Notes: generated by a model not told the origin, from the sequence alone. A stretch of DNA of 64,000 bases from Octopus bimaculoides (GCF_001194135.2 NC_068989.1:56861133-56925132); one strand, 5' to 3'. Shown: positions 32,570 to 57,314, counted from the first letter of the stretch. A program made the numbers and translations.

Positions 32570-32623
32570 GAGACAGCGAGCTGGCAGAAACGTGAGCACG
32601 CCGGGCGAAATGCTTAGCGGTAT
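32570..32623 (+). mobile_element. Family A SINE head, interrupted by the ORF1-only element
   Basis: gcgagctggcagaaacgtgagcacgccgggcgaaatgcttagcggtat; the expected continuation ttcg(g/t)ctg reappears at 34158-34165. Confidence 0.85.
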
Positions 32624-32630
32624 AACGGCT

Positions 32631-34151
32631 CTGTGAATTATTGTGAATTATTGTGAATACTGTTGTGTTACTTTGTGAAAACTGTCTCGGTAAATAATTG
32701 TGATTCTTGTGGAATTATTACGGTTACGTTTCACGCGAGCCGCTGCAATTTTTCCCAGCTATGGCAAGTGGTAGTGTCTCCAGTATGGAGAGCTACGCCA
32801 AGGCCACTGCGGTGAGGAAGCCAGTGCCGCTGGAAACCAAAATTCTGAGGACAGTTGTGTATCGTACACAGGCTGTAGAAACCTGTAAAATTGAAATGGT
32901 GACGGAAGAGGAAATCGAGGAGTGCCTGGGTGAAATTGTGAATGAAGCCACGTACATCAACAGAGGAAGAAAGTTCGGTACGGTAGAGGTGAGGTTCGCC
33001 ACTATAGAAGAGGCAACCAAGCATGCGACCAACATTTTAAGAAGTGAAAACATAGCATTGCTACCAAGTTATAGAGGAAAAAGAAGTGTGAAAATACGTA
33101 TTCCCAGAGTTACACCAGATATTAAACCAGAGTGGTTGGTTGCAACAGTGCTGGCTGCAACCAAGGAGGAGCCGGAATTGGAACCAGTGGCGAAATCAAA
33201 AGTGCGCAAATGGTGGGGATTTGGACACGAAATGTGGCTTTTTGCCACATTCGAGGACATAGAAATAATTCCCTACCAGATAGAAGTGGAGGATGAGAGA
33301 ACGTTAAATGCTGTAGTCGAGAGAAGGAAACCAAATTGCTACATATGCGGGGAAAGAGGTCATATGAAGACCAAATTCCCCCTATATGAGTTCACACAGC
33401 CACAGCAAGAGAAAGCACAAGCAGAGGAGGAAAACATTGCAGACCACACTGAGGAAATGAAATAGAGACAGAAGTGTGAAACAGAGAAAACAAAGGAGAA
33501 CGAAAATGGAGCTACTAACCCTAAAAAGCGAAAGAAAAATAAGTCAAAGGAACGGTCAACAGAAAACAAAAAAGAGATAGAAAAGCCAGAAACTAATAAT
33601 GTACAAAAAGAGGAGGAAAGAACGGATAAAGATGTGAAATACAAGGGGGTTTTGATAAAGTACGAGAATTGCGAGCAGATGGAGAGAAAAGTCGAGAGGT
33701 TGGAGGAAATAATAAGAGTGAAGATGCCAGAGAAATGTGCTGAGAAATGCATTTTGATACATGAGGAAAACTACTGTGAGTACATAAAAGAACTTGGTGA
33801 AAATATAATAACGAAACGGGTATGGTTGGTGGAGACACCACCCCTAGAACTGATTATTTGCAGTTGATAGGGACGGAAGTAACAATGGTTAATGGGAGAA
33901 AGGTAATGCGAGTGTTTGAATTTTTTGAGTTACAAAACCGTTAAAATGTTTACATGACGTTGAACGTAAAAGTGAAAAACTGGATAAATGTAACCACCCG
34001 ACTTCGGGGATCGAGTGGACATTGCGCCTCATTTTTTTCATTCTTTTATTTTAATTACCCCGATTTTATGTTTGTTGCGTTTTGTACTGTATTTATGTTT
34101 TGTGATGTCTTAAAAATTCTTTGTATAGCCCTTGATGGGTAATAAAGAAAT
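32631..34151 (+). mobile_element. ORF1-only non-autonomous retroposon, copy 1
   Basis: Imperfect 13 bp TSD CGGTATAACGGCT (32618-32630) / CGGTATTTCGGCT (34152-34164); GT-rich 5' leader; one ORF; ends AATAAAGAAAT; no RT. Confidence 0.8.
32761..33867 (+). pseudogene. ORF1p/Gag-like nucleic-acid-binding protein, about 368 codons, one in-frame TAG at 33463-33465
   Basis: MASGS...SYAKAT...RGRKFGTVEVRF...LLPSYRG...IRIPRV...WWGFG...VVERRKPNCYICGERGHMKTKFP (knuckle, last Cys lost). Frame continues past the stop through a K/E-rich linker to ...KCILIHEENY...IICS*. Confidence 0.85.
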
Positions 34152-34165
34152 CGGTATTTCGGCTG

Positions 34166-35150
34166 TGTGAGTTTGGATTTATTGGTAATTATTATTGGTG
34201 TGCGTCTGTATAGTAAGTGCAAGTTTCTATTGACTGCTTTTGTGTTATTTCCTGTTATGATTATTGTTCCTGTGATAATTATTTGTGTGATAGTCTTCGT
34301 TCGAAAACTATCGTGTGTTTTCCCTTGTGGGGGAAACATTAATTGCTGGCAAGATGCTGAAAAGTGTAACTTCGTCCGGCGAAGAGTCGCCAACTGACAG
34401 GGCGGCAAAAAAGAGTGAAAGTTTAATATTTGGCGATATTTCGGATTCTTCTGAAAGTGAATTTCCCCAACCATCAATGTGTAATAATGACGTGTAAAGC
34501 CTTCAAACAGAAGAAAATAAACAAAAAAAAAGTTTTGCGTCGGCGGCTGGAGATGGAACCCGCCAGCTGTCGATAAACAAAAATGACCTGATAAAGAACA
34601 AAGATATGATAACAATTGAAGACGGTGTTGTGAAAGTTCAAGCCCCGGAAGAACTATTAATGTTAGAAAAAAGAAAAACAATTATTTTAAAATCTTACTG
34701 TCTAAAAGGAAAAAAATTGATCGAGTGAGTGAAGAGAAAGTTGAGAAGTGCTTGAAACCCATCTGGCAGGATGGGTTCCCTAGCTAGAGGGAAGAAGTTT
34801 GATACTATCGAAGTACGACTTGAAGATATAGTAACTGCACAAATGCACTCCGTTAAATCTTTAGAAACGGAGGACGTTGTTTTAATTCCAATATATATGA
34901 GAATGAAGACGCCAAAGATACGTATACCAAGGGTACCACCTCAAGTCGACCCTATGAAGTTGATGGCGGCAGTCCTGGCAAAAAAGGAAGATAATATAAC
35001 ACTCCCTCACGCTACCGTCACAGAAAAGGTTTATTGGACTAGTCAAACGGTTCACCTTCTAATACAAACAGAACAGTCAATCTTAGAACAATTACCGGAG
35101 AAAATAGAAATTGGGGAGGAATTCCTTAACGTATTCGTCACGTGCCCCTG
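34166..35150 (+). mobile_element. ORF1-only element, copy 2: decayed, 3'-truncated just before the zinc knuckle
   Basis: SFASAAG...EEKVEKCL...ARGKKFDTIEVRL...LIPIYM...KIRIPRVPP...YW...LPEKIEIGEEFLNVFV aligns to copies 1 and 3; several frameshifts. Confidence 0.8.
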
Positions 35151-35479
35151 AGCAAATATGGTGTACTCAGCTGTGCTCCATAGTAATGTCTGCGATGGCG
35201 TTGCTACAGAGAGGGACAGTCGCTGCAGCAGTCACTCCACCTCGCGGTGATCATTTCTGTGACGGGCGGCTGTTATCCCTGTTTTGTGAAGGAAATCGGT
35301 AGAACGGGGTCCGAGAACACCAGGCGTCACGACGGCGACCAGAACAAACAGATATTGGCCGGTAAGGCCCCTGTGTTTATTGATTTTTCTCTCCTCTGCG
35401 TTACGGGCGGTGACAACCGGATTTGCAGCCGATGGAGCTCGGTTGGAGCAAATTTAAACAGCATCTTCTTCCAAAGATG

Positions 35480-35960
35480 CTAGTTTCTAGTCGATACAGT
35501 ATATAAATTAGACTTAAACTCTTAGAATGAATTACGTAAATCTGTGCCTTAAGATGCATAGACCATTTAATTGAAGGTGGTCTTCGTTTATTAATTTAAA
35601 GTAGCATAAAAAGCGCAGGCGTGGTTATAGTCGCAGGCATGACTTAAAGTTTATTTATTTTGGTTTATACTAGAGACAACCCTGGATATTTTCAATATCA
35701 TTAATCTGTTTTATGTCAATTTATTTATTTAGTGACTCTTTCATTAGTACTTCAGCAAGTATTGCAAAGTGTTAGGCGTCTCTGAAAAGGCTGATTATAA
35801 ATACACATGTTTCTGTTTTATTGGACTTCTTCAGCGTACGGATTTGTCAACCTTCCGTTCCAGAATGATTAAAAAAATGATATTAGTCATTAGAGCTTAT
35901 ACTTGTTTTTTTCTCAACACATAATTATACGGATATCGAAATTTATGTTAACATTAACTT
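35480..35960 (-). pseudogene. Decayed rhodopsin-class GPCR-like fragment (TM1-TM3)
   Basis: ALMTNIIFLIIL... then LKKSNKTETCVFIISLF...ILAEVLMKES, matching the TM1 N / ICL1 K..KT.T.F / TM2 pattern; paralogous to 37215-37345. Confidence 0.45.
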
Positions 35961-36034
35961 GATTAAATATAAGGAGATTGTATTTGAATATGTTAGCTCT
36001 TAATATGTTAAATACTACATGATGAGTAAGCCAG

Positions 36035-36530
36035 ATAACAACAGATAACTTTGGAAGTATACTCTTGCCAACATGAGTAATATCAGGAAATAATGATTAT
36101 AATTTAACATTTATCAAATTATAATTTGATGAGATTATCAAATAAGGAAATGAATACTAATTTTCAAAAGAAAAATATTTATCACTTTAAGTAAAGCAAA
36201 TTTCTAATTTGTATAATTCCTCTCTCATTTACTCCCTCTTCTCCTCTTCTTCATCTCCTTCATCTTCCACGTTCTCCTCTTCCCCCTCTTCCTTTTCCTC
36301 TGTCTATGATTTTCTCTCTCTCATAATATTTGTGTCTAGCGTTCCTTTACTCATCACCTGCCACCAGGTCTAATAAGTGCACTCATCCTGCACTCCTTAT
36401 GTTAACTCACTGTGCTTATCTTTCACTCTATCTCTCCTCTCGCTGTACGATGTAAAACGAGAATGGTTGGTAACAAACAACCAAGCAGCCAAACCACATT
36501 TATATCGGCTATCATTATGCAGAGATACTG
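36035..36530. repeat. About 400-500 bp block in three local copies (36035-36530 +, 43200-43600 -, 44325-44720 +)
   Basis: Shared gaagtatact.ttgcca...gtaatatcaggaaata, atttgtataattcc.ctc, and cgttcctttactca...gtgcactcat.ctgc.ctcctt.tgttaa. Confidence 0.8.
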
Positions 36531-36619
36531 AATGTGTTAATACTGAATACGTTAAATGCGTTATCACTAATTTAACGATATAAGAGTTAAATATATTAAA
36601 CTAAGTAATAAGAGAACGA

Positions 36620-37700
36620 GTTTCTTAACGGAGAGAGGGAAATATTCAATCCCACACAAATCTTATACAACTACTACACAAATCTAAAGAAACAAAACAC
36701 TTATACCATACCAGGAGGACTGAAATTCTTCAATATGTTAGCCGATTAATGAATTCTAGGTGTAGGAGCGAGTCAGCTTAACTTATATAACACTCTGTAC
36801 ATAATTTTGGATATGTTTGAGCATTATTAACCCTTTTTATATCAATTTATATATAAAGGGAAAAGGGTAAAGACCCCCTTCGGTCATGAATGACCATGGG
36901 ATTACATCTAGAAAGTTCCCTTCCAAGACACTAGCCCAGACAAGGTTGTTTATGGAAAACCAGCAATCGCCCATGCATACCAGCCTCCCCTCACCACACT
37001 ACTGATGTTATCAAAGGAAAGGCAAACGCCGATACAGCTTGGCATCAGTGATGTCACAACTCATTTCTACAGATGGGTGAACTGGAGCAACGTGAAATAA
37101 AGTGTCTTGCTCAAGAACATAACATACGGCCCGGTTCGAGAATCGAACTCACTACCTCATGATTGTGAGCCTGACGCTCTAACTACTGAGCCATGTGCCT
37201 TCATAATTTATATATAATGCTGTACTTAAACTTTATGACTCTTTCATTACTACTTCAGAAAGTATAATATTGTGCGATGCTACTCTGAAAGTCCTGACGG
37301 AAAACAGAAAAGTGCTTGTTTTATTGGACCTTTTCCACGTATGGAGTCTTTGTGGGGATTACAGATAGACGAAATACGAAGTCTACTACAGAAGGATTTA
37401 AGCTCAGAAACGACAGGCCTCAGAGTAAATACTGAAAATCACTCGGTCTGGCAATTTACCGTTTCAACAAACGCTACTGCGAAAACAAAATTATTAATTT
37501 ACCGATTTTTATTTGTTTTTACCCAATTGTCCCCAGGCTGAAATTGTGAAAGACGCATCACTTGTCAAATTCAGTTGTTCTGCGTTCATTATATTACAAT
37601 AAACTTTATAATGTATTCTAAGCGTTTGCTGAAGAATGTTTTCTGAAAATATAAAATTTATTCAATTCAAAGCAACTCCTAATTACATAACCAATATTTT
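36620..37700 (-). pseudogene. Decayed GPCR-like paralog interrupted by SINEs
   Basis: YIIKFIVIYERR... and WKRSNKTSTFLFSVRTFRVASHNIILSEVVMKES; homologous to the copy at 35480-35960. Confidence 0.4.
36857..37204 (-). mobile_element. Full-length tRNA-headed SINE with RTE-like 3' tail and 13 bp TSD
   Basis: Head at right (ggcacatggctcagtagttagagcg...gagttcgattctcgaaccggg); tail ...ccatggtcattcatgaccgaagggggtctttaccc; TSD AATTTATATATAA at 36844-36856 and 37205-37217. Confidence 0.85.
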
Positions 37701-38236
37701 AAATAGCTGTGATGCAAGTCGTGCATGCAACAAACAACAGAATAGCTTCCGGCAAGCTGGGACTAAAATATTATACTGAATCCCTGGCTGACCCCATTTC
37801 TTTTCACTTCACTTGTTTCAGCTATATTGAAGTGCGACTAGTCAAAAACAAAGCAATATTTTAGATATTCGTTTAGCTGGCATAATACATTTAGAGCATT
37901 GTTCCCCATAGGCCAAGACACTGAAAGTCTGAGATTTTCTGTTGATGAGATTTTCATTTCTTTCATGTGGTCATTACATTCTCATTTCTAAAAGTCCACT
38001 GTAGCAATAAGACTTTCTGGTTAGGACTTCGCTTTGCAGGCATATGGCCCCGATTTTGATCCCACTGTACAGCATCATGTTGAAGTGTTTTCTACTGCAG
38101 CCTTGTGTTGGCCGATTCCTTGCAAGTGGAATTTGGCATATGAAAACTGTCTATACGTCTGTCTGTCTCTGTCTATGTACATATGTGTGTGTGTGTACGC
38201 AATATATATATATATATATATATACACATACACATA

Positions 38237-38450
38237 CAGTAATCCCTTGCCATATCGCGGTGCACCGGTTCACCTACCATGCACTCAGTACATCGCAGAT
38301 TTTTCTGGCTAATATATGTAAATTTATATCGCGGTCTCCTCAGTATATCGCAGGTTTTTGCGGCTGATGGGTATTTATATTTTTTTAGATTTTAATTATT
38401 TCTGTGGGAGGTTTTGGAACGTAACATCCGCGATAGTCGAGGGATTACTG
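38237..38450. mobile_element. Tc1/mariner (pogo/Tigger-like) MITE, 214 bp
   Basis: TA|CAGTAATCCCTTGCCATATCGCG ... CGCGATAGTCGAGGGATTACTG|TA: about 23 bp TIRs with TA duplication. Confidence 0.9.
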
Positions 38451-38459
38451 TACATATAT

Positions 38460-38747
38460 TGTTGTAAAGTGAGTTCCTCTCACTGGTATGATGTGTGACT
38501 GCTGTTGTACTGAAGTTGCCGTTTTACGCTAGTAGCCACAACACTTACTAGTCATCGGATAGCGTTGTATCTCTTCGTATCGGAATAGTAACACACTAAC
38601 TTCTGTCTTACTATCGCTGATAGCTCCACAAGACGCCGACTAGAACTGTCGACTTAGGACCCTTCCTCGACGACTGGCTACTGGTATATTTATAATGGCC
38701 TTTTCCTATCACTTTTTATCGGGAGGAGTATACAGTTTCACTATACA
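38460..38747 (-). mobile_element. 3' LTR of the Gypsy pol remnant, 288 bp
   Basis: Minus strand TGTATAG...TACAACA, preceded by polypurine tract AAAAGGAGAAA (38748-38758); TATA-like tataaat inside. Confidence 0.8.
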
Positions 38748-38814
38748 TTTCTCCTTTTAATTATTTTATTTAACAATCAATTTCTTTTATTCACCCTACC
38801 TCTTCCATTAAAAA

Positions 38815-41150
38815 AAAATTATATACTCGATATATTTTCTTCTTAGGCTCTGCTTTTAGGAACTCAGTGTTCTTCCTTTTTCTTGTACATGTGGTTTCGA
38901 CTTCTTGTAACGGTATTGAAATCTGAAAAGTGTCATATAGCTAATCTATCGGTATTCCTACTCTTGTTGGTTCCTTTTCTATGACTCTTTCCTTAAGCTG
39001 ATTTCTATATCTCCTTTCCATTCCATTTCTGCTTCTTACACCATACATAATTCTTTTTGTGTGTTACAATTTCTCCTTCCCTGTATTGCTTACCATTTCT
39101 GTACATTTTTCATATACCTTATCACCGATTCTAAAAAGATTTGGCATGTCTTTACTAACACGTAGTTTTTTCTTCACTGGTAACGGTTTTATCGAATACA
39201 GACTTCATCTTTCTGGCAAGCATTAATTCTGCTGGTGAACTTCCTTCTGGTGCATTTGGGTTTGGAGTAACTCTGTATACCCTTAAGAATTGTTGGATCG
39301 TGACCTCGACAGTGGCTTCCTTATTAGCTTTCTTTAAAGCTCTCTTAAAAGTGTCCATGAACCATTTAGCTCTTTACATTCGATCTAGGGTGATACAGTG
39401 CTATAGCTTTATGTTCTACCGTGAAAATCTCACAGAATCTTTTAAACTCACAGGATACAAACTGTGTTCCGTTATCAGAGACAATTATATCCAGTACACC
39501 AAATCTTTTGTGTAGCTGTTCATAACTATTAAGTAATAATATCCATTTACCGGGCCTGCAAAATCGATATGCAATTAGGACCATGGTATTTTCACTTCCG
39601 GTCAAGGTTCCCATTTTGTAGTAGGTAGTTTCGCTGCCAGCGCACATCCTCAGCAGCCTTTTACCAGTTTTCAACTACCTTGTCCATGCTTGGCCAGTAT
39701 ATGAAACCTCGCATCAGCGCTTTCACTCTAGAGATGCCTGGGTGTCCCACATGGAACTCTTTTAGCATTCTCTTTTCTAATGTCTGTGGTATGACCACCC
39801 TCTGAGCGTCCATTAGTACACCGTCACATATAGAGTACACACTCACATCTTTGCATCAGACCTTCATTTATTTCCTTTTGTCGACTACAGTTTTCTTCTT
39901 GTCTCATTAATACGTCGGCAATAATGTCCTTGATGTATGAGCTATGGCCCGTCTGCCATCGTTATCCTTGTATAGGAGCACGGCTCCTATCTCATCCTCG
40001 CTAGCATCTATAGCTAGTATTATCTTTAACTTTGGGTCGAAATGCGTAAGACACAAGTCTGAAGTTAACACATCTTTTAACTCGTTAAATGCTTTCTGGC
40101 ATGTCTCTGTCCAAACCCATTAGGCATTTTTTTTTTAGTAATTCATTAAGTGGTGCCTTTACTTTATGTATATTTGGGATATACACTTGGTAATAATTTA
40201 CCAAGCCTAGGAATGCTTGTAGCATTGTCCCGTTCGTCGGGAGTGGCATATTTCGTATTACCGTCGCCCTTGGTGGGTCCGGTCTGCGTCCACTTTCGCC
40301 GATTACTTGACTTAGGTATTTTATTTTTGCCACAAAAAATTCACATTTTTCTTCTGTCAATTTTAGCCCGTATTCACTTATTCTCTCGAATACTTTCTTT
40401 ATGTGTTCAACGTGTTGCACTCGAGACTCGCTACTTATCAAAGTGTCATCGAAGTATGCGATGGCAAAGTCACAATCCCTTAATATCGCATCCATTATTT
40501 GTTGGAATATGGTGGGTGCCACTTTTACTCCAAACGGCAATCGTTTGAACGTGTACAATCCACGGTGCATATTGATTGTTAGTAGATGTGTGCAATCTTC
40601 CTCTAAGTGAATTCGAAGGCACGCCTCTGAGAGGTCTAATTTCGAGAAAATTTTCCCTCCGTTTAGTTTAGCAAATACATTTTCTGGGCTTGGTAGTGGG
40701 TAATTGTGTGTGAGTAAACAGTCGTTTAATCCGATTGAGAAGTCTGCGCACACTCTTAGCTTTTTTTTCTTTACGTAGACCACTGATGCAGCGCAGTGTA
40801 CATGGTCAATCTTTTCAATTCAGGTTTTCCAACCTTTCTAGTCTTTATTGACCTAGTCAACCGCCGCAAACGGCCCGTTCCGTTTGGGCCTGAAAATAGG
40901 TGTTGAATTTTCTTTGATAGCAATCTTTGCTTTTGTTTTTCTGCAACAATCTCAACCTTCGGAAAAAAATTTGGGGAAATTTTCTTTCATTTTTGTCTCA
41001 GTTCATCAACCTCATTCGATCGTTTGGCTGTTCCGTTTATGCTATTGCCCAAAACGCTTATGGGTGTATTCCATAAATTAAATTTCTCCATAAATTCGGT
41101 GCCAAATAAATTCATGGATTTTTTTCAACACATAAACATTCACTTTTTTG
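38815..41150 (-). mobile_element. Decayed Ty3/Gypsy pol: protease end, RT, partial RNase H, integrase
   Basis: LRVCADFS.GLN...YPLP...FSKLDLSEA...RLPFG...AP.IFQ..MD...AYFDD; DAS...IGAVL; HxGHPGISR; IVSDNGTQF; HPRSN; SPAELM. Frameshifts and an RNase H deletion near 39900; 5' end cut by a SINE. Confidence 0.95.
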
Positions 41151-41349
41151 GCGTCGTCCTGTTCACTGTGGCTTAACGATATTTTGTCCATCTTTACGTT
41201 CTGAGTTCAAATTCCGTCAAGGTCGACTTTGCCTTTGATCATGTTGGGGTCGATAAAATAAGTACCAGTTGAATACTGCGGTCAATATAATTGACTTATC
41301 CCTCTTCCTTGAAATTGTTGGCCTTGTGCCAAAATTTGAAACCGATATT

Positions 41350-41760
41350 AATATAGTTCGTCCTTCCTTCTTCACCATTGTGAGTCCTATTCTTTAACAT
41401 TTAAATTCTTTCGATATAATAACATATGTCATTAATTCCATGATTTTTTTATTGGACAGAAAATTGGTTAATAATTGGAATGTGATTATATATTTTATTG
41501 ATATATGAGTGTACATATCTGGCAGCTATGATAATGAAACAAAGTTCGTAATAGACCAGATAATACACACATTGCTAATGTGTTGATAGTTGTAATATGA
41601 CAAAAAACGAAATTCTGACATTTCTGTTTTCTTGTCTGTAGAATATTAAATCTGAAACCACCAGACATTCATTTGTAAGAAGTTTAAATCGCAAAACATG
41701 ATATCCGGTATGGCTTTGTACCCAATTATATGGTTCAGTTACGTAGTTTTATGTTTGATC
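41350..41760 (-). pseudogene. Decayed GPCR-like fragment (TM1-TM2)
   Basis: IIGYKAIPDIMF..., LTNECLVVSDLIFYRQ, KKTEMSEF...NTLAMCVL across frameshifts. Confidence 0.35.
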
Positions 41761-46391: not shown

Positions 46392-46435
<44 letters not shown>

Positions 46436-46517
46436 ATATTTACATATATACATACGTATATATAGGAATAAATATGAACATGTATATATAATAGACACAT
46501 AATACTGACATACATAC

Positions 46518-46570
<53 letters not shown>

Positions 46571-46589
46571 TGTGTGTGTACACGTACTT

Positions 46590-47480: not shown

Positions 47481-48607
47481 GGCCTTTATTATTTTTTTGA
47501 AGGCGGCGAACTGGCAGAGTCGTTAGCACGCCGGGCAAAATGCTTGGCGGCACTTCGTCTGTCATTACGTTCTGAGTTCAAATTTCACCGAAGTCGACTT
47601 AGCCTTTCATTCTTCGAGGTCGATAAAATAAGTACCAGTTGAGCACTGGAGTCGATGTAATCGACTTAACCCGTTTCCCGAACACGCTGGCCTTGTGCCA
47701 AAATCTGAAATCAATGTTTCGATGGTCTTTGAAAATTTCTCTGGTTATTTTTGTTGCTATTGTTATTGAAGTGATTGTAATTGTTTTATCCTATTAATGC
47801 AGTTTACCAGACAAGGTTTGTTCAGGTATAACGTAACAGGAACGAGTCTCAGTCTGTATTCCAAATTACGATCTTAATCCTGGCTTACAGGTTCAAGGGT
47901 TTGCTAACAAGTGTTAAAGATAAATAGCTGACCAGTATAGGGATGGTTATAAGTGACAAGTGGTTTAAAGTAATCAATAGATTAATTTCTGTAATAAAAA
48001 CAATTAGTAAAAAACACATCATTGAAATTTTTAACTTCTATGCAGCTTATTTCTCACCTTGTTGAACAATTGTAACATCTCATTTATATTGTACAAAATA
48101 TCAACAACTCCTGACCAAGTTTCCATGGATGAAATTATGTAATATGAATGAGACTCACTACCATTGAATTATCATAACTCTAGATACGAACGAACCAAGT
48201 TACATAATGAAAAACAATATAAATTTTTATATCCTTGTATGTTACTAAATTTGGTAGCGAGGTGCGGTTTACGCCTTTAGTGATTCTAAGAAGATATATA
48301 GTATCGAAGTGACGTAATTTTCATTAATCTGAAATTGCATTTTCGGTAGTTTATTGTATGCTGAGAGCTATATTAAGCAGTTCTTGATTTTTATTCATCA
48401 CTAAAAAAAGCTAATAAGGTTCTATGAGTTCAGCTGTTGTGAAATTTACTGTATCTAATGTTCCAGGTCCTTACTTTTCGTTTCAAGCCAAAGAAAAGGG
48501 AGATTGTGATGTTGTCCTCAATAGCTGGGTCAAGTTATTTATGTGTGAGGGGCTGTACAAGTTTATTGTTCGTGTAGTAAGCTATGAAATTCTCACATTC
48601 TCCCGAT

Positions 48608-48775
48608 TTACTGTAATTCAGACCGTTTCATGGCCCAAGAAGACAAAATAGAAAAGGCGTTGCCCCGGAGGATGGCGAGGGAGATGCGCTGGAACAGCCG
48701 CTCTGACCCACTTGCGGCTGGGTTAACACTGGTTTTCAGGGAAGAGATTTGGCCAAATAAATCCAGTTTCTTTGT
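48608..48775 (-). mobile_element. 3' end of a CRE-clade (RLE) non-LTR retrotransposon ORF
   Basis: LFGQISSLKTSVNPAASGSERLFQRISLAILRGNAFSILSS...* matches the CRE C-terminal FQR.S.A..RGNA motif. Confidence 0.75.
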
Positions 48776-49880
48776 ATGTAATTAATTACTAATTTAATTT
48801 GCATTTCTCTTTCATCATTTAGACAAGTGCCAGAAAACAAATTATATTCTAATGATGTGAGATTGTTGTAAATCCTTTTCTAGTCTTGGCTGAAGGTGAT
48901 CCATCAATGTTGCTTGAAGTGAAAGGGGAGGTCTATAAGAAATAGCATCCTAATATCTTAAAATAACACCACTTAGTCTGAAAAAAGAAAGGATACATTG
49001 GATGTATTGTAGTCCAAGATACACAAAATAATAGGATGGCCACATCTGGAATGCCTTTGATTATAAGCCTGCTCAGTTAGAGTTGATAAGTGGGGGGAGG
49101 GCCTGAATAACACTAACTACTACTACTACAGTAACAATAATCTCCATTAATGCATTTCAGCAATTACGATTTCGCTTTCTATGAGTTTGTGACGTCATAC
49201 TCGAGGACCTTTCTTTCTTTCTTTCTTTCTTTCTTCTTTCCTTTATTTCCTTCTTTCTCCTTCATCATTTTTACACACTGCCTCTTTGTCTTCGTTTTTA
49301 CCTTTATCCTTCCCTTTTTACTCTCTCTCCTTCATACACACACAGATTCACACACACACACGCTCGTGCCCACGCAGCATACATCTCTCTCATTTCTATT
49401 TTATATTTGTCAATCCTTTCGTATTAATCTCAATTGTTGATCGCAGTTAATATCAAATAATATAAGTTTATCTCCTTCAATATTTAAGCTATTTAACATT
49501 ATGTATCTCTGCTGCTTAGTCCCGCCTTTTATATTCCAAGTTCGAATCTAGTTTGGGGTTCATATTTACTTCCATCATTTTCTTTCTTCTCCCACTTAAG
49601 GCTGATAACCTTAAACCTCCACACTAGCGGTAACAATAAAACATTCATACTTATTTCTTCCGTATTTTGATTTCTAGCTTCACCAGTACTCTTTGTCTGG
49701 CTAATGTTGATAAAATGTGTGTAAATTTTGTATTGGAACCGATTTAATTCACTATATATCCTGCTTCCTTCAGGCTGCAATAAGGTGTAACTAAGATGAT
49801 ACAATGTCACCTTTACTGTCTATATCATACCTACAAGACGTCGTTATACAAAAGATAAACTGTGAAATCGGAAATATCGA

Positions 49881-50240
49881 AAAGAAGAGCACTCAGAGAG
49901 TGCAAACCTCCACCAAGGCATCACCAACGTCCTCTCAACAATTAGCCAGAGATGATTTTTAGAATGGGAATATCTGAAATAAACTCAACTGCTCTCACAA
50001 ACGAGAATATTAAAAACGAACCCGAACGCTCTCATAAATTAAGTAAATAAAAAAAAAACAGAAAAAAATAATCCAGAAATGATCCCAAAATCTAATCAGT
50101 TTGTGCCAGTCACAAGGCCAAACATCCCTGAAAGTTTCATCCGAACCCATCTAGCAATTCTTGAGATATCTTGTCCACGGACAAACAAACAAACACGATT
50201 GAAAACAATACTCCCGCCTTCGTTAAGGCATAGGTAATAA
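49881..50240 (+). mobile_element. Helentron-associated / DINE-1-like non-autonomous element
   Basis: 5' gagcactcagagagtgcaaacctccaccaaggc; internal (AAAC)n near the 3' end; terminal hairpin GCCTT-cgtt-AAGGC at 50216-50229. Confidence 0.5.
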
Positions 50241-51349
50241 AGTGAGAACACCCTTATAACCTCATTTTCGTCAATGACATAATAGTGATTATTGAAACGA
50301 TCTCAGAATTACTGGGAGATGCTGCAGGAAATGCTATTGGATCTGATAGAAGAAAGAAGCCTTTGGCATAATCCCTTTTATGAAGTGACAGAAGCACATG
50401 GCCTCAAACGCCTGCAGGACATTTGATGGATCAAACAAGTGACTAAGTCGTATCCATGAAACTACAAGCGGTCAAAAGGTATTCCGAAACGAAAGTAGCG
50501 GGATAACTCTGATCGGGTTTTTTGTTCAAACTAGAACGATTGTTAGGCAGAGTAGACAGAGTTTACAGAGCAATATGTACCTTCATGATAAGGAAGACAA
50601 CGTGCCTCTCCCTTCCTATATTCCTCGAGCCAATGATATATCAGAAATACTAAACATATCGTAGTATTAATTTAGCCCCTTTACATTCTATGTTCACCCA
50701 TTCGTATTCAATAAATCAAACCAGACAGCCACTGCAGTCGTTTCAGTATACTCCATTCAATAAATTTATTATCTTATAGTAACACAAGAAATCATTATTT
50801 TTCTCCTTTTCTATTGAAGATATTTCTAAGACATACGCTGTAGATTTATTTCTTACTTGACAGACGTAGACGCAGAATTAAGAAGTTCGCTGCACCGCCA
50901 TGTTAGTTTAGGTTTGATCCTATTGTGTGGCATTTTTGACAAGTGTCATGTACTCTAGCTTCAGATTGGTCAATGTCTTGTGAAGAAAATTTGGTTGCAG
51001 AAACTGTACGGAAGTTTGTATGTATGTATGAATGTATGCAAATATGTGTGTACGTATGTATGTACGTGCGTACGTACTTACATATGTATGTATGCATGTA
51101 TGTATGTATGTATGCATGCATGCAAATATGTGTGTATGTATGTATGCATGTATATACGTATGTATGCGTGTATGTATGTATGGATGGATGTGTGAATGGA
51201 TGTATGTATGTGTTTTAATTTGAGTATATCGATATGAAGTGTTGCGTCGAGTTTCATGCCTATAATTTAGAACCATTCTATAACAGAAACCTTGAAGGCA
51301 ATATCTCAGAGTTATTCGGTTACCATATGATGAATCGCGTTTGCAAGTC

Positions 51350-51620
51350 TTGTGCAAGTTTATTTTGTTGTAATTACAAGTGAACTCGTATGGAATTGGC
51401 GAATAGTTGCTAGAACTTAGCAGCGATTATTTATCATAACAGAACTTTGTGCATTACTCTAGCGTACTACAAAGAGAAAATATGTCTTATCTTTTCTGTG
51501 ATATGAAATCTGAGATACAATATCAGTTCAATGGACGCTTGTTGTTCATGAGAGGATTAATTTTACTGAAAAGTATACTTGAAAGTGATAAGTGATACTC
51601 CGCTCACTAACAAACAAACA
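51350..51620 (-). pseudogene. Decayed GPCR-like fragment (TM6-H8)
   Basis: SERSITYHFQVYFSVKLILS (TM6); LL**IIAAKF*QLF (TM7/H8). Confidence 0.35.
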
Positions 51621-53055
51621 AACAAACAAAAATGCTTCTCATTAATACATTACAATATTTATTATTGCCACTATAGTTCTAAATTTAAAATCCCGCAATC
51701 AACATTGTCAAAGCGAGTTCGTAGAAATCTGGGGGCTTGCTTCAGTAAAAATTAGACGATAAAAAGGCGCTCGAATTCCGCCAAGGTCAACTTTGCCTTT
51801 CATCATTTCTGGGACGATAGAATAAGTACCAGTTGAGTATTGGGTCCATGGAATCGACTTACCCCTCCCCCGAAATTGTTGGCCTTGTATATATATTTGA
51901 AATCAAAATATCAATTTGTACTTAATTAAATAGAAGTCTCTATCAACGGCATATCTGACAATCATGACTTCTCAAGTTCATCAATATGGTAGAGGAAGTG
52001 AGGGAGAGATAAAATTTCAGCAACAGATGTAAGTAAATGGACCTCCTTTGGTTTCGACGATGAGAATAGATTTCCTCCTTCAGCAGAATTACTTGCTCGA
52101 TGAATTAGTAAGTAAGTGGCTAAGTATACGTGAACCTTCAACGTAATTTTCTAGCAAAGTGATTGTGATACACTATGTGACATGGCTAAATATTTTAGAT
52201 TATAGGCACAATCCATCCAACGGGCATCCTTACAGTTTCTGTCAACCCAATATTGTTCATAAGGCTTAGTTTGACCCGACGATAGCAAAAGTCACATCCT
52301 CAAGAGGCTAACAAATGGGATCGAAATCGAGATCTGGTGGTTGAGAAGCAAACTCCGTGATCATTCAATCATGCTACATTACAGCAACATATGTAATCAT
52401 TACATTAATGTATATGATATGCGTTATACACACACGCATAAGCACACACACACACACACACACGTGTGTGTGTGTGTTTGTGTATTAATAAATATATTCA
52501 TATGCATACGTATGCATTACGTATGTATGCATTAATATAATATAATCATTATATTAACTCTAGGTGATATATTTTTATTGTTCTACAGACGCACTCACGA
52601 CTACTACTTCTATATCACAAAATACCTAATTTCTAATCATGATTTATGGGAGAAATTTCAATTTAATTTCAATATATTTTCATCAAATAATAACATTTAA
52701 AAATCGTTATAAATTCAGTGAAGTAAATCAAATGTTGCAACAAATTGTATGTAGAAGTAAGAATGTCAAGGAGGGAGAGAGAGAGAGAGGGAGGGAGAGA
52801 GAGACCCATATTTAATTATGAAGTCTAGCAAATTGGAATAAAACAATTTATAGTAAGTAGATATAGTCATCAATAAAAATACACATGCAACTATATGTAC
52901 ACGTATAAGTATACATATATATATTGTACGCCAGAGGTATGCATAATCTGTAGCATTAATACACTTAATGTATGGTGTTCAGGCTAAAGTCAGGGTAATT
53001 TACATTATCAATTTAAGATTTTGAAATTTTAATAATGAATAATACATTCTCACAT

Positions 53056-53113
<58 letters not shown>

Positions 53114-53133
53114 GTATGTATGTATGTATGTAT

Positions 53134-53310
53134 CAACAGAGGTGTCATCTACGAACAGAATAGGATCGAAGGAGTACAAGAAAAAATGAGCTGCGCAAGT
53201 CCAGAGCCAACTTCTTGCCTTCATTTTCAGCACACCACCTGTACCCGATCTGCGGCAGAAACTTCCCAGCTATAGCCGTACACACCATAATCCATCTTCT
53301 CCCATGTGAT
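53134..53310 (+). mobile_element. 3' fragment of an RTE (BovB-like) LINE ORF
   Basis: YEQNRIEGVQE / ELRKSRANFLPSFSAHHLYPICGRNF resembles the RTE C-terminus (YEQ.RI...K..LRK.RA...CP.C.R.F). Confidence 0.6.
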
Positions 53311-53372
53311 GTCCTTTATATTTCTAATGTTTTATCTATCTATCTATATATACGTGTAGTGTAACGTAGTTA

Positions 53373-53518
53373 CTCGTCGCCAATTGTAGTATCGCTACTA
53401 TTCATGACGATACTTGTTTACACTATAACCATAGAGTAACAATAAAATATATAAGGAAGCAGAGTAACAACAACGTAACAATCCAACAAACTCTCTACGA
53501 ACTATACACGAACCAACA
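53373..53518 (-). mobile_element. Partial second LTR plus primer-binding site
   Basis: 53385-53518 is a direct repeat of 54472-54605; on the minus strand it is followed by AT-TGGCGACGAG (53373-53382). Confidence 0.8.
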
Positions 53519-53599
53519 AACGTGAAATTTTTGATGTTTTTCTTAACGTAGGTTTCCCAAATCTTATCCACATGTCGGTATTAATAATAGAGATGTCGC

Positions 53600-54300
53600 T
53601 CCCAGTATCTAGCTGTTTTTTAATATTCACTTAATTTTACATGTACAAATTTCCTCTTTTTTGTGTCGCTTCTAATGTACGTTGAGAAAACTTCAGAATT
53701 TTTCATGTTCGACCTTCCTAACTTTGCTCTGCGATGTGAGCTCTTGTGTCCTACTTTTTGGCAACTGTAACATTTTTGCATTTTGAAACAACAATCCTTT
53801 CTGAAATGTAGGGCTCCATATTGGTAGCATGAGTTTGGTCTTAACATTTTTCTTTTGTTTATATCCCCTTGTACAAAAAAAAAGGAGGCACTTAAACGTA
53901 TCGGGATTAGTTCCTTCAGTTTAAACCTTTACGGTCCCGGCATACGTGACAAAATCTTCCTTTCTTTTAACTAGATTTCAACACTCCCATCGAGTGTTAA
54001 ATAGGTAATATTTTTGATAGTAGTTCGACTGTTTTCTGGAAACAAATTTCACTATTTTTTTGGTAGTATGAAATAATATTTTTCATGTTCAGCCGGCGCT
54101 AATTTATGTAATAATAGTCTTACCTTTTCGTTGTCCGTCCACGACTTGCAATATTCCATGAAGAATTCTTCGTACCTTGTTAAAGTACGCTGCAAACGTT
54201 ATACCCTCTTCTAGGTCATAAGTGAATTCTGTTATAGAGTTCGATACGCCATCTGGCGAAAACGAAATTACAGTGTTTCTTAAGACATAGTTCCATTAAT
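53600..54300 (-). mobile_element. Decayed Ty3/Gypsy gag with zinc knuckles and start of protease
   Basis: FSPDGVSNSITEFTYDLEEGITFAAYF...KVRLLLHKLAPAEHEKY; CYQYGALHFRKDC...KCYSCQKVGHKSSH; KRKFVHVK. Confidence 0.85.
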
Positions 54301-54663
54301 TGTTGTTGTTTTTCTTGTTGCTGAAGTCGTTTCTGCAACTCCTGCTGCTGTTCTTGCAACAGTTTTGCAACTGTATTATAGAAGCTAATAGGTCTTCCAT
54401 CATTAACAGCTTTGTATCACAAAAATTTGTTAACTGACCTGCGTGAGTTTCAAATGCTCATCGCCAATTATTGTAGTATCTCCACTATTCATGACGATAC
54501 TTGTTTACACCAATACCATATAGTAACAATAAAATATATAACGAAGCAGAGTAACAACAACGTAATAATCCAACAAACACTTCACAAACTATACACGAAC
54601 CAACATACAATATTCCGACAAACTGCCAAAACGACACCCCACGACTTCCTGCGATCGACTCTA

Positions 54664-56338
54664 ATTTCTTTATTTGGCACATGCGACCACAACACAGAGG
54701 AGGACACTACAAGGATAGACGCAACAATACAGCACGTGGGGTACAAAGAAAGAATGATGAATGAAATGAATTACTTGCAATGAGGTGATGAAATGGCATA
54801 CGAGTCCCCCAAAACTCGCAGTTTCATTTTACAGTTCTCTCATACAGTTAATGATCGTTTTTTCCCTTTAACAATTGTAAGTGGCCACAGCTCCTCTGCC
54901 GTTACTACACTTGGCAGGATGTCGTAGCCCACGTATAATCAACTTATTTGAAACTTGTCCGGGTGTATCTGTTGCAGTCTATGCATCACATGCTCTTCTA
55001 CCAATATGGCTTTCTTTTTTTCTTCAAACGTTTCAGGGTCCAGTTTAAGTCTTACTAATCCTTTTATTCTTGCAATCATCTTTTCCAACTCTAAATCCTT
55101 GTCGTAAAAATTCACTGTTCTGATATTTTTATAATCAACTCTTCCAATTACCTTTCCTTCCATCCTTGCTCTTGTCTGCTCGTCTATTATCTTGTTCGAC
55201 CATTTCCTCCGCTTTTCCTTTCTTTTCACTTTTTCGTGCTCTGTATCTTGGGTTCGATTCTCAACTTCGTCTTTTTCGGTTTCCATTTCCTTCTCTGTCT
55301 TTTTTTCCTCCTCTCTTTTTTGGGAGGTTCTTTGGCGGCGATTCAGTCCGCATACGCTTTCTATCTGTTTCTTGAGAAATTTTCTCGCACTCCACAGTTT
55401 CCACCTGCTTTTTCTCAACCTCCTTTTGTACGCCTTCCACCATCTCTTCACAGACCTCTATTTCTTCCACTTGTACTTCTCTGCGGGGGCACACCGCCTG
55501 CATGTGTCCCCTACTTTTACACTTATAACAGATTGGTGGTCTTCCCTCCACCACAACTCTCAGTCGTGCTCCGTCAGGGAGCTCTACCTCCTCTGCTATG
55601 TTGTGTAGATCTGGTAAGGTTATGTGTACGAGTGCATCTATACCAAATCCCCACCAGTTGATCTCTCTCGATTTTTCTACTTTTAAAACCTCCACTTCGT
55701 TGCAGTTATGAATAACGGCTGTAACCAGCCATTTCAGATCTATTTCGGGAGGTGCTCGTCCAATTCTCACACGTGCAGCTCTTCTTCCACAATAGGTAGG
55801 TAAAAGGGCCCACCTAGCCATTCTTAAGGGTACAGTGGAGTGCTTTTTCGCCTCTTCCTCACTCGTAAATCGCACCTCTACCGTACCGAACTTTCTACCA
55901 CGTACGTAGAATGTTGTTAATTGCTTGACGTCGTTTAGGTACTGCTCCAATTCGTCCGTCTCAGCCACTTCTATTTTCTTTGTTTCAACGTTAAGCGTTC
56001 TGTATGTTATTATTTTTCTCTCGGCTCGCTCGAAAACTTCCTTCGGCGGTGTTAATTTTAAAACATCACCTTGCTTCTTGAATAATTTCTTGTATTTCTC
56101 TAATTTTGTTTTATCCACGTGTATCTCTTGCATTTCCATTGCATTGGCAGACAAGTTTCTACTTGTTGCCGCAGCATACGTTGTTTCTTCCATACCCGAT
56201 ATGGGTAGGAAAACAATTTTCAACAATAAATATTAACGATAATATTTACACAACAATTCTTAAAACAATTTCAACAGAACGCAAATCAGACAAACTCATC
56301 GCGTTGAACGCTTTCTTTAACCCAAAATCACAACACCT
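54664..56338 (-). mobile_element. ORF1-only non-autonomous retroposon, copy 3, complete, 1675 bp
   Basis: 14 bp TSD TAGAGTTGATCGCA (56339-56352) / TAGAGTCGATCGCA (54650-54663); one ORF; ends AAATAAAGAAAT; no RT. Confidence 0.88.
54939..56193 (-). pseudogene. ORF1p/Gag-like protein with intact CCHC knuckle; one +1 frameshift near 55320
   Basis: MEETTYAAAT...RGRKFGTVEVRF...LLPTYCG...VRIGRAPP...WWGFG...VVEGRPPICYKCKSRGHMQAVCP; K/E-rich linker; second frame ends ...KKAILVEEHVMHRLQQIHPDKFQIS*. Confidence 0.88.
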
Positions 56339-57314
56339 TGCGATCAACTCTACCTGTCTCTCACTCACATCGCAACTATTTATAGTCATTCGGTCGAATC
56401 TATTGTCGCAGGAGGCGACGTGACGCTCGCCACAACAACATGTATATCTATCTATCTATCTACCGATACGTGCATACATATATGAAGGGAGAGAAAGAGA
56501 TAGGTGTGTGTATTTGTATGTATGTACATATGTATATGTATGTGTGTGTATATATGTATGTATAAGTATATGTATATGTAGTTAGCGCCACCAAGCCAGT
56601 AGTACATGTCTTTCAACTCTGATGCATCTCCCACACAAACAAAGTTTACACCTATCAAACCTACAAATCATTAACTCGATCTCCTGCTTAGTTCCGTTCA
56701 TGGTATGCAAGCAGTCTAGATTCAATATATAAATTGATAATTCTAACATCACGTCGATTCCATGCAATTCCAGTTTCCCTTGATACCATATAATGCTTCT
56801 AGCAAAGGACTATCGAATCTATATATATACACACATATGTGTATTTACTGGCCTTCTTTTTTAGAAATGAATAATATTATTTAAAGTACATCTTTGACTA
56901 GGAGGTATCTACACTCCTACAAAATATCTGGAAGAACTCAAGAAAAAAGAAACTAGTTTTATAAATCGTATGGCCTTAAAATCTCACTACTCCCTAATTG
57001 CAGTCATGCCCTATTGTCTCTTACCTCCCTAAGATGGCATGCTACTTAACATAAACATATTGATAAACTTGTTTGTATTCATATATATATATATATATAT
57101 ATACACATCAGTGTTGTGTGTGTGTGTGTTTGTACGTGTGAATGAATGCTTGTATATATGTTTTTAAGTATATACGAGCATTGCCACTACATTCAGTGTG
57201 GTTAATATATTGATGACGATATAAATTTAATGCTGTATCAGTTGCATATATCAAGTTATATATATGTGTGTGTATGTACTATATTCATATATGCATATGT
57301 ATATTTATACCCCA

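What the first reader, a model, noticed from the sequence alone, without database searches (positions are those of the whole stretch)
32618..56352. Family of ORF1/Gag-only retroposons with no RT: three diverged copies in 24 kb
Seen: three elements (32631-34151 +, 34166-35150 +, 54664-56338 -) encode homologous proteins sharing S(Y/F)A.A, RG(R/K)KF(G/D)T(V/I)EVR, L.P.Y and .RI.R. Copies 1 and 3 also share WWGFG and a CX2CX4H knuckle. Copies 1 and 3 are bounded by TSDs only 1.5-1.7 kb apart, so the unit that moved holds one ORF and no endonuclease or RT. Known: variable 13-14 bp TSDs indicate target-primed reverse transcription, and ORF1-only non-autonomous LINE derivatives exist elsewhere (HAL1 for L1). 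Inference: this is a mobile lineage that keeps its own RNA-binding protein and borrows ORF2p in trans. The copies differ greatly in protein sequence, yet 1 and 3 each carry only one lesion, which suggests long selection on the ORF during propagation. I do not know of a description in cephalopods, but cannot search.
Basis: partly seen in the sequence, partly recalled or inferred. Interest (0 to 1): 0.85.

Follow-up and report, generated by a model that had tools for sequence, protein, structure and literature searches.

The report
ORF1-only LINE derivatives in octopus
Two complete 1.5-1.7 kb jumping elements in this octopus window carry only the RNA-binding first gene of a known kind of LINE retrotransposon and have lost its copying enzyme, so they most likely move by borrowing that enzyme, as mammalian HAL1 and fly HeT-A elements do.

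Summary
Three homologous coding copies are present at the stated coordinates. Copies 1 and 3 are complete units of 1,521 and 1,675 bp, each bounded by a 13-14 nt target-site duplication and each with one lesion in its ORF.

The protein has two tandem RRM domains plus a CCHC knuckle (AlphaFold pLDDT 92; best PDB matches are tandem-RRM proteins). This is a type I LINE ORF1p, not a retroviral Gag.

In Octopus vulgaris, O. sinensis, Argonauta hians and a marine metagenome contig, homologous ORF1s are followed directly by an endonuclease plus reverse-transcriptase ORF2. That identifies the parent as an L1/Tx1-like LINE.

Copies 1 and 3 have no ORF2. Their ORF1 runs into a 3'UTR of about 280 nt that ends in the same tail as the full-length LINEs (…GCCCTTGTGG..AATAAAGAAAT). 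A SINE-like repeat in the window has this tail too.

Three more ORF1-only copies were found in O. vulgaris and O. sinensis. Two have target-site duplications; the third lacks its tail.

Copy 2 is a decayed, 3'-truncated piece and says nothing about ORF2.

Verdict: a cephalopod analogue of HAL1/HeT-A, a new member of a known kind. Mobilisation in trans and a single origin are inferred, not shown.

The parts
32571..32630 (+). 5' part of an abundant SINE-like repeat into which copy 1 (and earlier copy 2) inserted; its last 13 nt (32618-32630) are the left TSD of copy 1
   Evidence: blastn to at least 20 other copies or fragments in the window; TSD coordinates
32631..34151 (+). Copy 1, a complete ORF1-only element of 1,521 bp. 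5'UTR 32631-32760; ORF1 32761-33867 with an in-frame TAG at 33463-33465; degenerate knuckle 33337-33378 (last Cys is Phe); 3'UTR 33868-34151, ending ...GTATAGCCCTTGATGGGTAATAAAGAAAT
34152..34164 (+). Right TSD of copy 1 (CGGTATTTCGGCT); also the SINE-derived word directly upstream of copy 2
34165..35150 (+). Copy 2: GT-rich 5'UTR and the N-terminal two thirds of a homologous ORF1 (coding similarity about 34540-35139). It has at least 3 stops and is cut off before the CCHC knuckle. ORF2 status unknown
   Evidence: no ORF1 or ORF2 continuation downstream
56339..56352 (-). Upstream TSD of copy 3 (TAGAGTTGATCGCA)
54664..56338 (-). Copy 3, a complete ORF1-only element of 1,675 bp. 5'UTR 56338-56194; ORF1 56193-54939 with one frameshift in an A-run near 55299-55305; RRM1 about 56013-55792; RRM2 about 55785-55549; CCHC knuckle 55530-55489; K/E-rich linker; C-terminal domain about 55270-54942; 3'UTR 54938-54664, ending ...GTGGTCGCATGTGCCAAATAAAGAAAT
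54650..54663 (-). Downstream TSD of copy 3 (TAGAGTCGATCGCA)
18720..19172 (-). Two tandem copies of the SINE-like repeat. Their 3' tail (...GTGTAGCCCCTTGTGGACAGTAAAGAAAT) matches the tail of copies 1 and 3 and of the full-length LINEs, so they are presumed fellow users of the same ORF2p

Best explanation
Copies 1 and 3 are non-autonomous, ORF1-only derivatives of an L1/Tx1-like LINE family of octopods. Each is 5'UTR + ORF1 + 3'UTR.

ORF1 encodes a type I ORF1p: an N-terminal region, two tandem RRMs, one CCHC knuckle, a K/E-rich linker and a small C-terminal domain. The whole APE-RT ORF2 is missing, and the 3'UTR with the terminal tail of the parent LINE is kept.

Proposed mechanism (inferred): the element is transcribed and its RNA is bound by its own ORF1p. 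ORF2p made by a full-length relative recognises the shared 3' tail and inserts the element by target-primed reverse transcription, giving 13-18 nt TSDs. A SINE-like repeat with the same tail presumably uses the same enzyme.

Shown: homology to LINE ORF1, absence of ORF2, the shared tail, the TSDs, recurrence in two other species, and coding constraint. Inferred: supply of ORF2p in trans, the need for the element's own ORF1p, and a single ancient loss of ORF2.
For: Parent LINE identified.
- In O. vulgaris locus L003, a homologous ORF1 (503 aa) overlaps the start of a 1,132-aa ORF2. That ORF2 has Exo_endo_phos (1.9e-15), RVT_1 (8e-31) and zf-RVT (5e-9).
- ORF1 followed by ORF2 is also seen in O. 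sinensis L002, Argonauta hians L006 and a marine metagenome contig L007.

ORF2 is absent from the window copies.
- tblastn with the L003 ORF2 finds nothing in the window (best E 2.6).
- After the ORF1 stop, copies 1 and 3 have 284 and 275 nt (287 and 278 with the stop codon) and then end. The 3'UTRs after ORF2 in the full LINEs are comparable, about 210-257 nt.

The 3' terminus is shared.
- The last 40 nt of c1, c3, L004 and L008 align with the tails of the full LINEs L002, L003 and L006. In 11 of 12 comparisons 0 of 2,000 shuffles reach the score; the twelfth reaches it 4 times.
- The Argonauta full-length LINE ends in the same AATAAAGAAAT and has a 16-nt TSD.

TSDs flank c1 and c3. c1 lies inside a SINE-like repeat whose homology stops at the TSD.

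Recurrence in long-read assemblies.
- L004 (O. vulgaris): about 1.73 kb, with TSD GCTGGGTTCG[T/G]CTA(G)CTC.
- L008 (O. sinensis): about 1.85 kb, with TSD AGCTAGC[G/A]A.
- L005 (O. vulgaris): lacks its tail.
- None has ORF2 similarity within 7-8 kb on either side.

Fold. AlphaFold on a 130-sequence alignment gives pLDDT 92 and pTM 0.79. The best PDB matches are tandem-RRM proteins: IMP3 RRM12, hnRNP A2/B1, Sxl and HuD. RRM plus CCHC defines type I ORF1p and is typical of the Tx1 group (PMC5203782).

Coding constraint.
- c1 versus c3: pN 0.41, pS 0.74.
- L004 versus L005: pN 0.27, pS 0.74. These two ORF1-only copies are collinear through ORF1 and the 3'UTR.
- Third codon positions are near random while first and second are conserved.

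Phylogeny. ORF1-only copies and the O. bimaculoides gene models form a neighbour-joining clade apart from full-length LINE ORF1s (59% bootstrap).

L1-Tx1 LINEs are listed as recently active in O. vulgaris: 13 families, 421 insertions, mean about 5.4 kb (PMC13282606). That matches the 5.28 kb L003 unit.
Against: - The sample is small: five ORF1-only copies against four loci with ORF2.
- No full-length relative close to c1 or c3 was available, so a recent parent with ORF2 cannot be excluded.
- The clade has only 59% bootstrap support. The 3'UTR starts of distant subfamilies could not be aligned convincingly, so one ancient loss of ORF2 cannot be separated from several independent losses.
- Both window copies carry a lesion, so they are not themselves active masters.
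- The 5' boundaries of L004, L005 and L008 are complicated because all three sit at the same site of a larger repeat.
- Pfam scores the knuckle below its threshold (17 bits against 20.8).
Confidence: 0.75

Rival explanations
1. Recurrent dead-end by-products. Each ORF1-only copy arose separately from a full-length LINE RNA, by splicing, template switching or an internal deletion in a master copy, and was inserted once. There would then be no self-propagating ORF1-only lineage. HAL1 itself arose several times independently.
For: Full-length LINEs with homologous ORF1 and the same tail exist in the same genomes. A GTAAGT-like word resembling a splice donor sits at or just after the ORF1 stop in both kinds of copy. 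3'UTR starts of distant subfamilies do not align. The clade has weak support. The literature says HAL1 arose independently several times (PMC5753468).
Against: The ORF1-only copies keep the GTAAGT-like word, so they are not products of splicing from it. L004 and L005 are collinear ORF1-only copies at only 46% protein identity with pN well below pS, which implies long divergence after ORF2 loss. All five ORF1-only copies fall in one clade apart from the four full-length ORF1s. Their architecture and 3'UTR length are the same across subfamilies.
Confidence: 0.15
2. A host gene family derived from LINE ORF1 (domesticated, as L1TD1 is in mammals). The window copies would then be retrocopies or pseudogenes of it rather than members of a transposon family.
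For: Several O. bimaculoides, O. sinensis and O. vulgaris gene models encode intact or nearly intact proteins of 350-450 aa. The coding constraint is strong.
Against: The copies have LINE termini and TSDs and sit inside other repeats: a SINE-like repeat, a putative LTR and a foldback-like repeat. There are many diverged subfamilies and more than 1,000 database relatives, most of them fragments. The longer gene models are chimeras with unrelated host exons. Both window copies are broken.
Confidence: 0.07
3. Gag-only remnant of an LTR retrotransposon or retrovirus-like element, as the word 'Gag' in the finding's title suggests.
For: There is a CCHC knuckle. An LTR-element gag fragment lies next to copy 3.
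Against: There are no terminal repeats in c1 or c3. The fold is tandem RRM, not a capsid/nucleocapsid. Homologues are followed by APE-RT ORF2s, not by protease, RT and integrase. The neighbouring LTR-element gag is unrelated in sequence.
Confidence: 0.01

Closest known systems
HAL1 (half-L1) of mammals
   Same: It is a non-autonomous LINE derivative that keeps the 5'UTR, ORF1 and the parent's 3' end and has lost ORF2. It is thought to use the parent LINE's ORF2p. It encodes only ORF1p (PMC5753468).
   Different: HAL1 derives from mammalian L1, which has a type II ORF1p (coiled coil, one RRM, CTD; Pfam Transposase_22) and poly(A) tails. The octopus elements derive from an L1/Tx1-like LINE with a type I ORF1p (two RRMs plus CCHC). 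They end in a specific non-poly(A) tail that a SINE-like repeat also carries.
HeT-A telomeric retrotransposon of Drosophila (from my own knowledge, not checked here)
   Same: It is a non-LTR element that encodes only a Gag-like ORF1 protein with CCHC knuckles and depends on reverse transcriptase supplied in trans. Its coding capacity has been kept for a long time.
   Different: It belongs to the Jockey clade, is restricted to telomeres and serves a host function. The octopus copies are dispersed, inside a SINE-like repeat, a putative LTR and other repeats.
L1/Tx1-group autonomous LINEs with type I ORF1p (Tx1L, Keno and others; 'L1-Tx1' families annotated in O. vulgaris)
   Same: ORF1p has RRM(s) plus a CCHC knuckle. 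In the full-length relatives ORF2 has APE, RT and zf-RVT. There are hints of target preference and head-to-tail arrays.
   Different: The window copies have no ORF2 and so are not autonomous. Clade assignment rests on Pfam domain content and a published repeat table, not on an RT phylogeny.
SINEs that share a LINE's 3' tail
   Same: Mobilisation in trans through a 3' tail shared with a partner LINE. The window's SINE-like repeat carries the same tail.
   Different: SINEs are short and non-coding. These elements are 1.5-1.9 kb and keep a 370-420 aa ORF.

Membership tests
Non-LTR retrotransposon insertion (TPRT) | Target-site duplication of variable sequence directly flanking the unit | tested here: met
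   c1 has 11 of 13 matching and c3 has 13 of 14. L004 has 17-18 nt, L008 about 9 nt, and the L006 full LINE 16 nt.
Non-LTR retrotransposon insertion (TPRT) | Defined, conserved 3' end; no terminal direct or inverted repeats | tested here: met
   A shared tail ...GCCC(C)TTGTGG..AATAAAGAAAT is present. Self-blastn and the repeat search show no LTRs or TIRs.
LINE type I ORF1p (Khazina and Weichenrieder classes, as summarised in PMC5203782) | At least one RRM domain followed by a CCHC zinc knuckle | tested here: met
   The AlphaFold model has pLDDT 92 and two beta-alpha-beta-beta-alpha-beta units. Foldseek's best hits are tandem-RRM proteins at E 5e-5. CX2CX4HX4C is present in c3. Pfam zf-CCHC scores only 17 bits, below its cut-off.
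LINE type I ORF1p | Encoded directly upstream of an APE-RT ORF2 in autonomous relatives | tested here: met
   Seen at L003, L002, L006 and L007.
Autonomous L1/Tx1-like LINE | Carries its own ORF2 with endonuclease and reverse transcriptase | tested here: not met
   There is no ORF2 similarity anywhere in the window. Only 275-284 nt lie between the ORF1 stop and the 3' end.
ORF1-only non-autonomous LINE derivative (the HAL1 kind) | ORF1 homologous to that of an autonomous LINE, ORF2 absent, and the parent's 3' end retained | tested here: met
ORF1-only non-autonomous LINE derivative (the HAL1 kind) | Amplified as such: several independent TSD-flanked ORF1-only insertions | tested here: met
   Four TSD-flanked units (c1, c3, L004, L008) in three genomes. 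The sample is small and there was no genome-wide census.
ORF1-only non-autonomous LINE derivative (the HAL1 kind) | Mobilised by the parent LINE's ORF2p in trans | not testable with these tools
   Inferred only from the tail shared with full-length LINEs and with a SINE-like repeat.
HAL1 proper | Derived from mammalian L1 with type II ORF1p (Transposase_22) | tested here: not met
   There is no Transposase_22 hit, the fold is tandem RRM plus knuckle, and the hosts are octopods.
LTR retrotransposon Gag | LTRs and a primer-binding site; capsid/nucleocapsid fold; pol downstream in relatives | tested here: not met
Processed pseudogene of a host gene | Poly(A) tail and an intron-containing parent gene | tested here: inconclusive
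   There is no poly(A) tail; the element ends in the LINE tail. Whether a parent gene exists could not be searched.

The most novel reading that the evidence does not exclude
An old, diversified lineage of ORF1-only retroposons has persisted across octopod species as a coding parasite of L1/Tx1-like LINEs. It would have split into subfamilies with only 35-45% protein identity while ORF1 stayed under purifying selection, which implies the element's own ORF1p is needed in cis. It may also prefer particular insertion sites, giving head-to-tail arrays and repeated hits at one position of a host repeat. Some copies may have been co-opted as host genes.
Probability: 0.35. Interest if true: 0.6.

Novelty: new member of a known kind. 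Interest (0 to 1): 0.45.

Why it matters
ORF1-only LINE derivatives are rare and are known mainly from mammals (HAL1) and Drosophila telomeres (HeT-A). Three things would make an octopod example useful.

- It would show that the 'keep the RNA chaperone, borrow the polymerase' strategy evolves repeatedly. This one comes from a LINE with a type I ORF1p and a specific 3' tail that a SINE-like repeat also carries.
- It would give a natural system to ask what ORF1p contributes in cis.
- It would improve repeat and gene annotation in cephalopod genomes. These copies are currently predicted as 'CCHC-type domain-containing' or 'uncharacterized' genes, and some are fused to host exons.

I found no description of such elements in the cephalopod repeat papers I could search (PMC9115989, PMC13282606). 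Repbase and Dfam could not be consulted.

Tried and rejected
- Pfam on the three conceptual proteins gave only sub-threshold zf-CCHC hits.
- The first AlphaFold run, on a 7-sequence alignment, was useless (pLDDT 47). It was repeated with 130 sequences.
- The word-indexed homologue search found only 4-6 O. bimaculoides proteins. The exhaustive profile search was needed.
- Exact-sequence contig look-ups failed for P0001, P0006, P0008 and the c3 ORF.
- L001 (O. bimaculoides) is uninformative about ORF2 because a 2.1-kb gap follows the stop codon.
- I looked for the 3' part of the interrupted SINE-like repeat downstream of copy 2. None was found up to 41 kb, and the fragment at 41171 is a different copy.
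- I tried to show a conserved 3'UTR hairpin by alignment and RNAalifold. MAFFT did not put the hairpins in register, so the result is not meaningful.
- I tried to align the 3'UTR starts of distant ORF1-only subfamilies to prove a shared deletion junction. This was not convincing.
- ARAGORN and Rfam do not recognise the SINE-like repeat as tRNA-derived, so I do not call it that.
- The LTR-Gag reading was considered and rejected.
- The placement of copy 2 with the full-length LINE ORF1s in the tree (57% bootstrap) is not upheld by pairwise scores and is left open.

Full report
**What is in the window**

Six-frame translation and tblastn confirm three homologous coding regions: copy 1 (c1, 32761-33864, +), copy 2 (c2, 34540-35139, +) and copy 3 (c3, 56193-54942, -).
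- c1 and c3 share 44% identity over 178 aa (E 5e-44).
- c1 has one in-frame TAG (33463-33465).
- c3 has one frameshift in an A-run near 55299-55305.
- c2 has at least three stops and stops abruptly near 35150, before the zinc knuckle.
- The knuckle is a complete CX2CX4HX4C in c3. In c1 the last Cys is Phe, while the closely related O. bimaculoides protein P0006 has Cys there.

**Boundaries**

Both complete copies end in ...AATAAAGAAAT.
- c1 is flanked by CGGTATAACGGCT (32618-32630) and CGGTATTTCGGCT (34152-34164).
- c3 is flanked by TAGAGTTGATCGCA (56339-56352) and TAGAGTCGATCGCA (54650-54663).
- In shuffles of a 400-nt search region, the c3 match is reached 0 of 20,000 times and the c1 match 127 of 20,000 times.

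The c1 duplication has independent support. Its left flank (32571-32630) is the 5' part of a SINE-like repeat with at least 20 copies or fragments in the window. Homology to that repeat stops at the duplicated word, and both words share a G that departs from the repeat's consensus.

c3 lies inside what looks like the 5' LTR of an unrelated LTR-retroelement fragment. Neither copy has terminal repeats of its own.

**What the protein is**

Pfam gives only a sub-threshold zinc-knuckle hit. An exhaustive profile search found 1,131 relatives at E up to 1e-3. Those I looked up come from O. bimaculoides, O. sinensis, O. vulgaris, Argonauta hians, anonymous read assemblies and two marine metagenome contigs.

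The long database proteins are chimeric gene models joined to host exons (LDL-receptor, WD40, RGS, astacin). None contains RT.

With a 130-sequence alignment, AlphaFold models residues 1-238 of c3 at pLDDT 92 and pTM 0.79. The model shows two beta-alpha-beta-beta-alpha-beta units followed by the knuckle. Foldseek against the PDB returns tandem-RRM proteins first: IMP3 RRM12, hnRNP A2/B1, Sxl and HuD.

RRM plus CCHC is the definition of type I LINE ORF1p, which is typical of the Tx1 group (PMC5203782). 'Gag' is therefore a loose label. This is a LINE ORF1p.

**The parent LINE**

Genomic loci of relatives settle the origin.
- **L003 (O. vulgaris).** A homologous 503-aa ORF1 overlaps the start of a 1,132-aa ORF2 with Exo_endo_phos, RVT_1 and zf-RVT domains. 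The 5.28-kb unit is present three times, head to tail.
- **L002 (O. sinensis).** A 615-aa ORF1 is followed by a decayed ORF2.
- **L006 (Argonauta hians).** ORF1 is followed by a complete ORF2 that is 52% identical to that of L003. The element has a 16-nt TSD.
- **L007 (marine metagenome contig).** The order is ORF2 end, ORF1, ORF2 start.

A recent O. vulgaris repeat annotation lists L1-Tx1 LINEs as recently active: 13 families and 421 insertions with a mean length of about 5.4 kb (PMC13282606). That fits the L003 unit. I did not build an RT phylogeny, so the clade assignment rests on domain content and that table.

**Why c1 and c3 are ORF1-only derivatives**

1. tblastn with the L003 ORF2 finds nothing in the 64 kb (best E 2.6).
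2. After the ORF1 stop, c1 and c3 have 284 and 275 nt (287 and 278 with the stop codon) and then end. This is about the length of the 3'UTR that follows ORF2 in the full LINEs, roughly 210-257 nt.
3. The last 40-60 nt carry the same tail as the full LINEs (...CCCTCT.TGT..GCCC(C)TTGTGG..AATAAAGAAAT). The Argonauta LINE ends in the identical AATAAAGAAAT. Local alignment scores of the terminal 40 nt are reached by 0 of 2,000 shuffles in 11 of 12 comparisons between ORF1-only and full-LINE tails, and by 4 in the twelfth.
4. The SINE-like repeat at 18720-19172 has the same tail. This is the classic sign that the partner LINE's enzyme acts in trans on RNAs carrying that tail.

Because the TSDs flank the ORF1-only unit, ORF2 was already missing from the RNA that was inserted. 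It was not deleted afterwards.

**Recurrence in other genomes**

Three more loci from gap-free assemblies carry ORF1 with no ORF2 similarity within 7-8 kb on either side.
- L004 (O. vulgaris): about 6924-8652, TSD GCTGGGTTCG[T/G]CTA(G)CTC, tail ...CCTTGTGCCTATAATAAAGAGAAAT.
- L008 (O. sinensis): about 7258-9107, TSD AGCTAGC[G/A]A.
- L005 (O. vulgaris): lacks the last 65 nt or so.
- L001 (O. bimaculoides): uninformative because of an assembly gap.

Of the ten separate loci with ORF1, four have ORF2, five are ORF1-only (c1, c3, L004, L005, L008) and L001 is unknown. c2, which shares the c1 locus, is also unknown.

**One lineage or several?**

A neighbour-joining tree of the ORF1 core places all ORF1-only copies, together with the O. 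bimaculoides gene models, in one clade apart from the full-length LINE ORF1s. Bootstrap support is only 59%.

L004 and L005 are collinear through ORF1 and the 3'UTR. They are only 46% identical in protein, with pN 0.27 against pS 0.74. For c1 versus c3, pN is 0.41 and pS 0.74. Third codon positions are near random.

This argues for long divergence under purifying selection, at least partly after ORF2 was lost. I could not align the 3'UTR starts of distant subfamilies, so several independent losses, as reported for HAL1 (PMC5753468), remain possible.

c2 cannot be counted either way. It is truncated, and its affinity is split between c1/P0006 in the RRM core and L002/L003 in the N-terminal part.

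**Mechanism**

*Shown:*
- ORF1p homology to an autonomous LINE
- absence of ORF2
- the shared 3' tail
- TSDs of 9-18 nt
- recurrence in three genomes
- coding constraint

*Inferred:*
- The element's RNA is packaged by its own ORF1p.
- ORF2p from a full-length relative recognises the tail and performs target-primed reverse transcription.
- The retained ORF is needed for the element's own propagation.

Confidence in the ORF1-only derivative reading is 0.75.

**Comparison with what is known**

The closest known kinds are mammalian HAL1 and, from my own knowledge, Drosophila HeT-A. HAL1 is ORF1-only and derived from L1 (PMC5753468). HeT-A is a Gag-only non-LTR element that uses RT supplied in trans.

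The octopus elements work like these but are not members of either. The parent is an L1/Tx1-like LINE with type I ORF1p, the 3' end is a specific tail rather than poly(A), and the hosts are cephalopods.

The two cephalopod repeat papers I could search do not mention such elements (PMC9115989, PMC13282606). Repbase and Dfam were not available.

I rate this a new member of a known kind, interest 0.45.

Noticed in passing
window 32618-34170; L003 2445-17026; L004 6818-8700; L005 6630-8790; L008 6700-9330: Signs of target preference or tandem formation. c1 sits exactly at the 5' junction of c2, and both are preceded by the same 13-nt word from the SINE-like repeat. L003 has three head-to-tail full-length units separated by CACTGATAA. 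L004, L005 and L008 lie at the same position of one foldback-like repeat, with 213-bp direct repeats flanking the L008 unit at 92% identity. This resembles Tx1L inserted in Tx1D, but no common target consensus emerged.
   Followed up: partly
window 33995-34020 (c1) and about 54800-54825 (c3); 3'UTRs of L004, L005, L008, L006, L003 and L002: Each 3'UTR has a short hairpin with a GGGG-containing loop at a nearly fixed distance from the 3' end. The distance is 125-136 nt in the ORF1-only copies and the Argonauta LINE, and about 193 nt in L002 and L003. The stems differ in sequence. A formal covariation test failed because the alignment was out of register.
   Followed up: partly
window about 33865-33895 and about 54935-54950; L002 about 9805; L004 about 8150; L005 about 8168; L006 about 8575; L008 about 8830: A GTAAGT-like word resembling a splice donor lies at or just after the ORF1 stop in both ORF1-only and full-length copies. 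Its meaning is unknown.
   Followed up: no
window 53380-54650 (-) and 56353-56440 (-): Fragment of an LTR retroelement: a putative 5' LTR split by c3, a TGGCGA primer-binding-site-like word, a gag with a CCHC knuckle, and the start of a protease (DTGS). The 139 nt at 54470-54608 are repeated at 53383-53521 (91% identity).
   Followed up: partly
window 18573-19172 (-): Three head-to-tail copies of the SINE-like repeat. The second and third are 5'-truncated at the same position, and the third has a different 3' tail. ARAGORN and Rfam do not call the repeat tRNA-like.
   Followed up: partly
window 40085-40783 (-) and 12860-13396 (-): Other retroelement pieces: a Ty3/gypsy-like RT fragment (YFDD motif), and the C-terminal part of a different LINE ORF2 with a CX2C...HX4C motif and a PD...D-like segment.
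   Followed up: no
L007 (ENA ERZ907901, marine metagenome contig, 6,159 bp): A LINE of the same family (ORF2 end, 861-aa ORF1, ORF2 start) in a marine plankton metagenome. The source organism is unknown, so the family may extend beyond the octopods sampled here.
   Followed up: no
proteins P0030, P0044, P0137, P0140, P0006: Public gene models fuse this ORF1 to host exons (LDL-receptor repeats, WD40, RGS, astacin). P0006 instead contains an internal duplication. These are annotation artefacts caused by the elements.
   Followed up: partly
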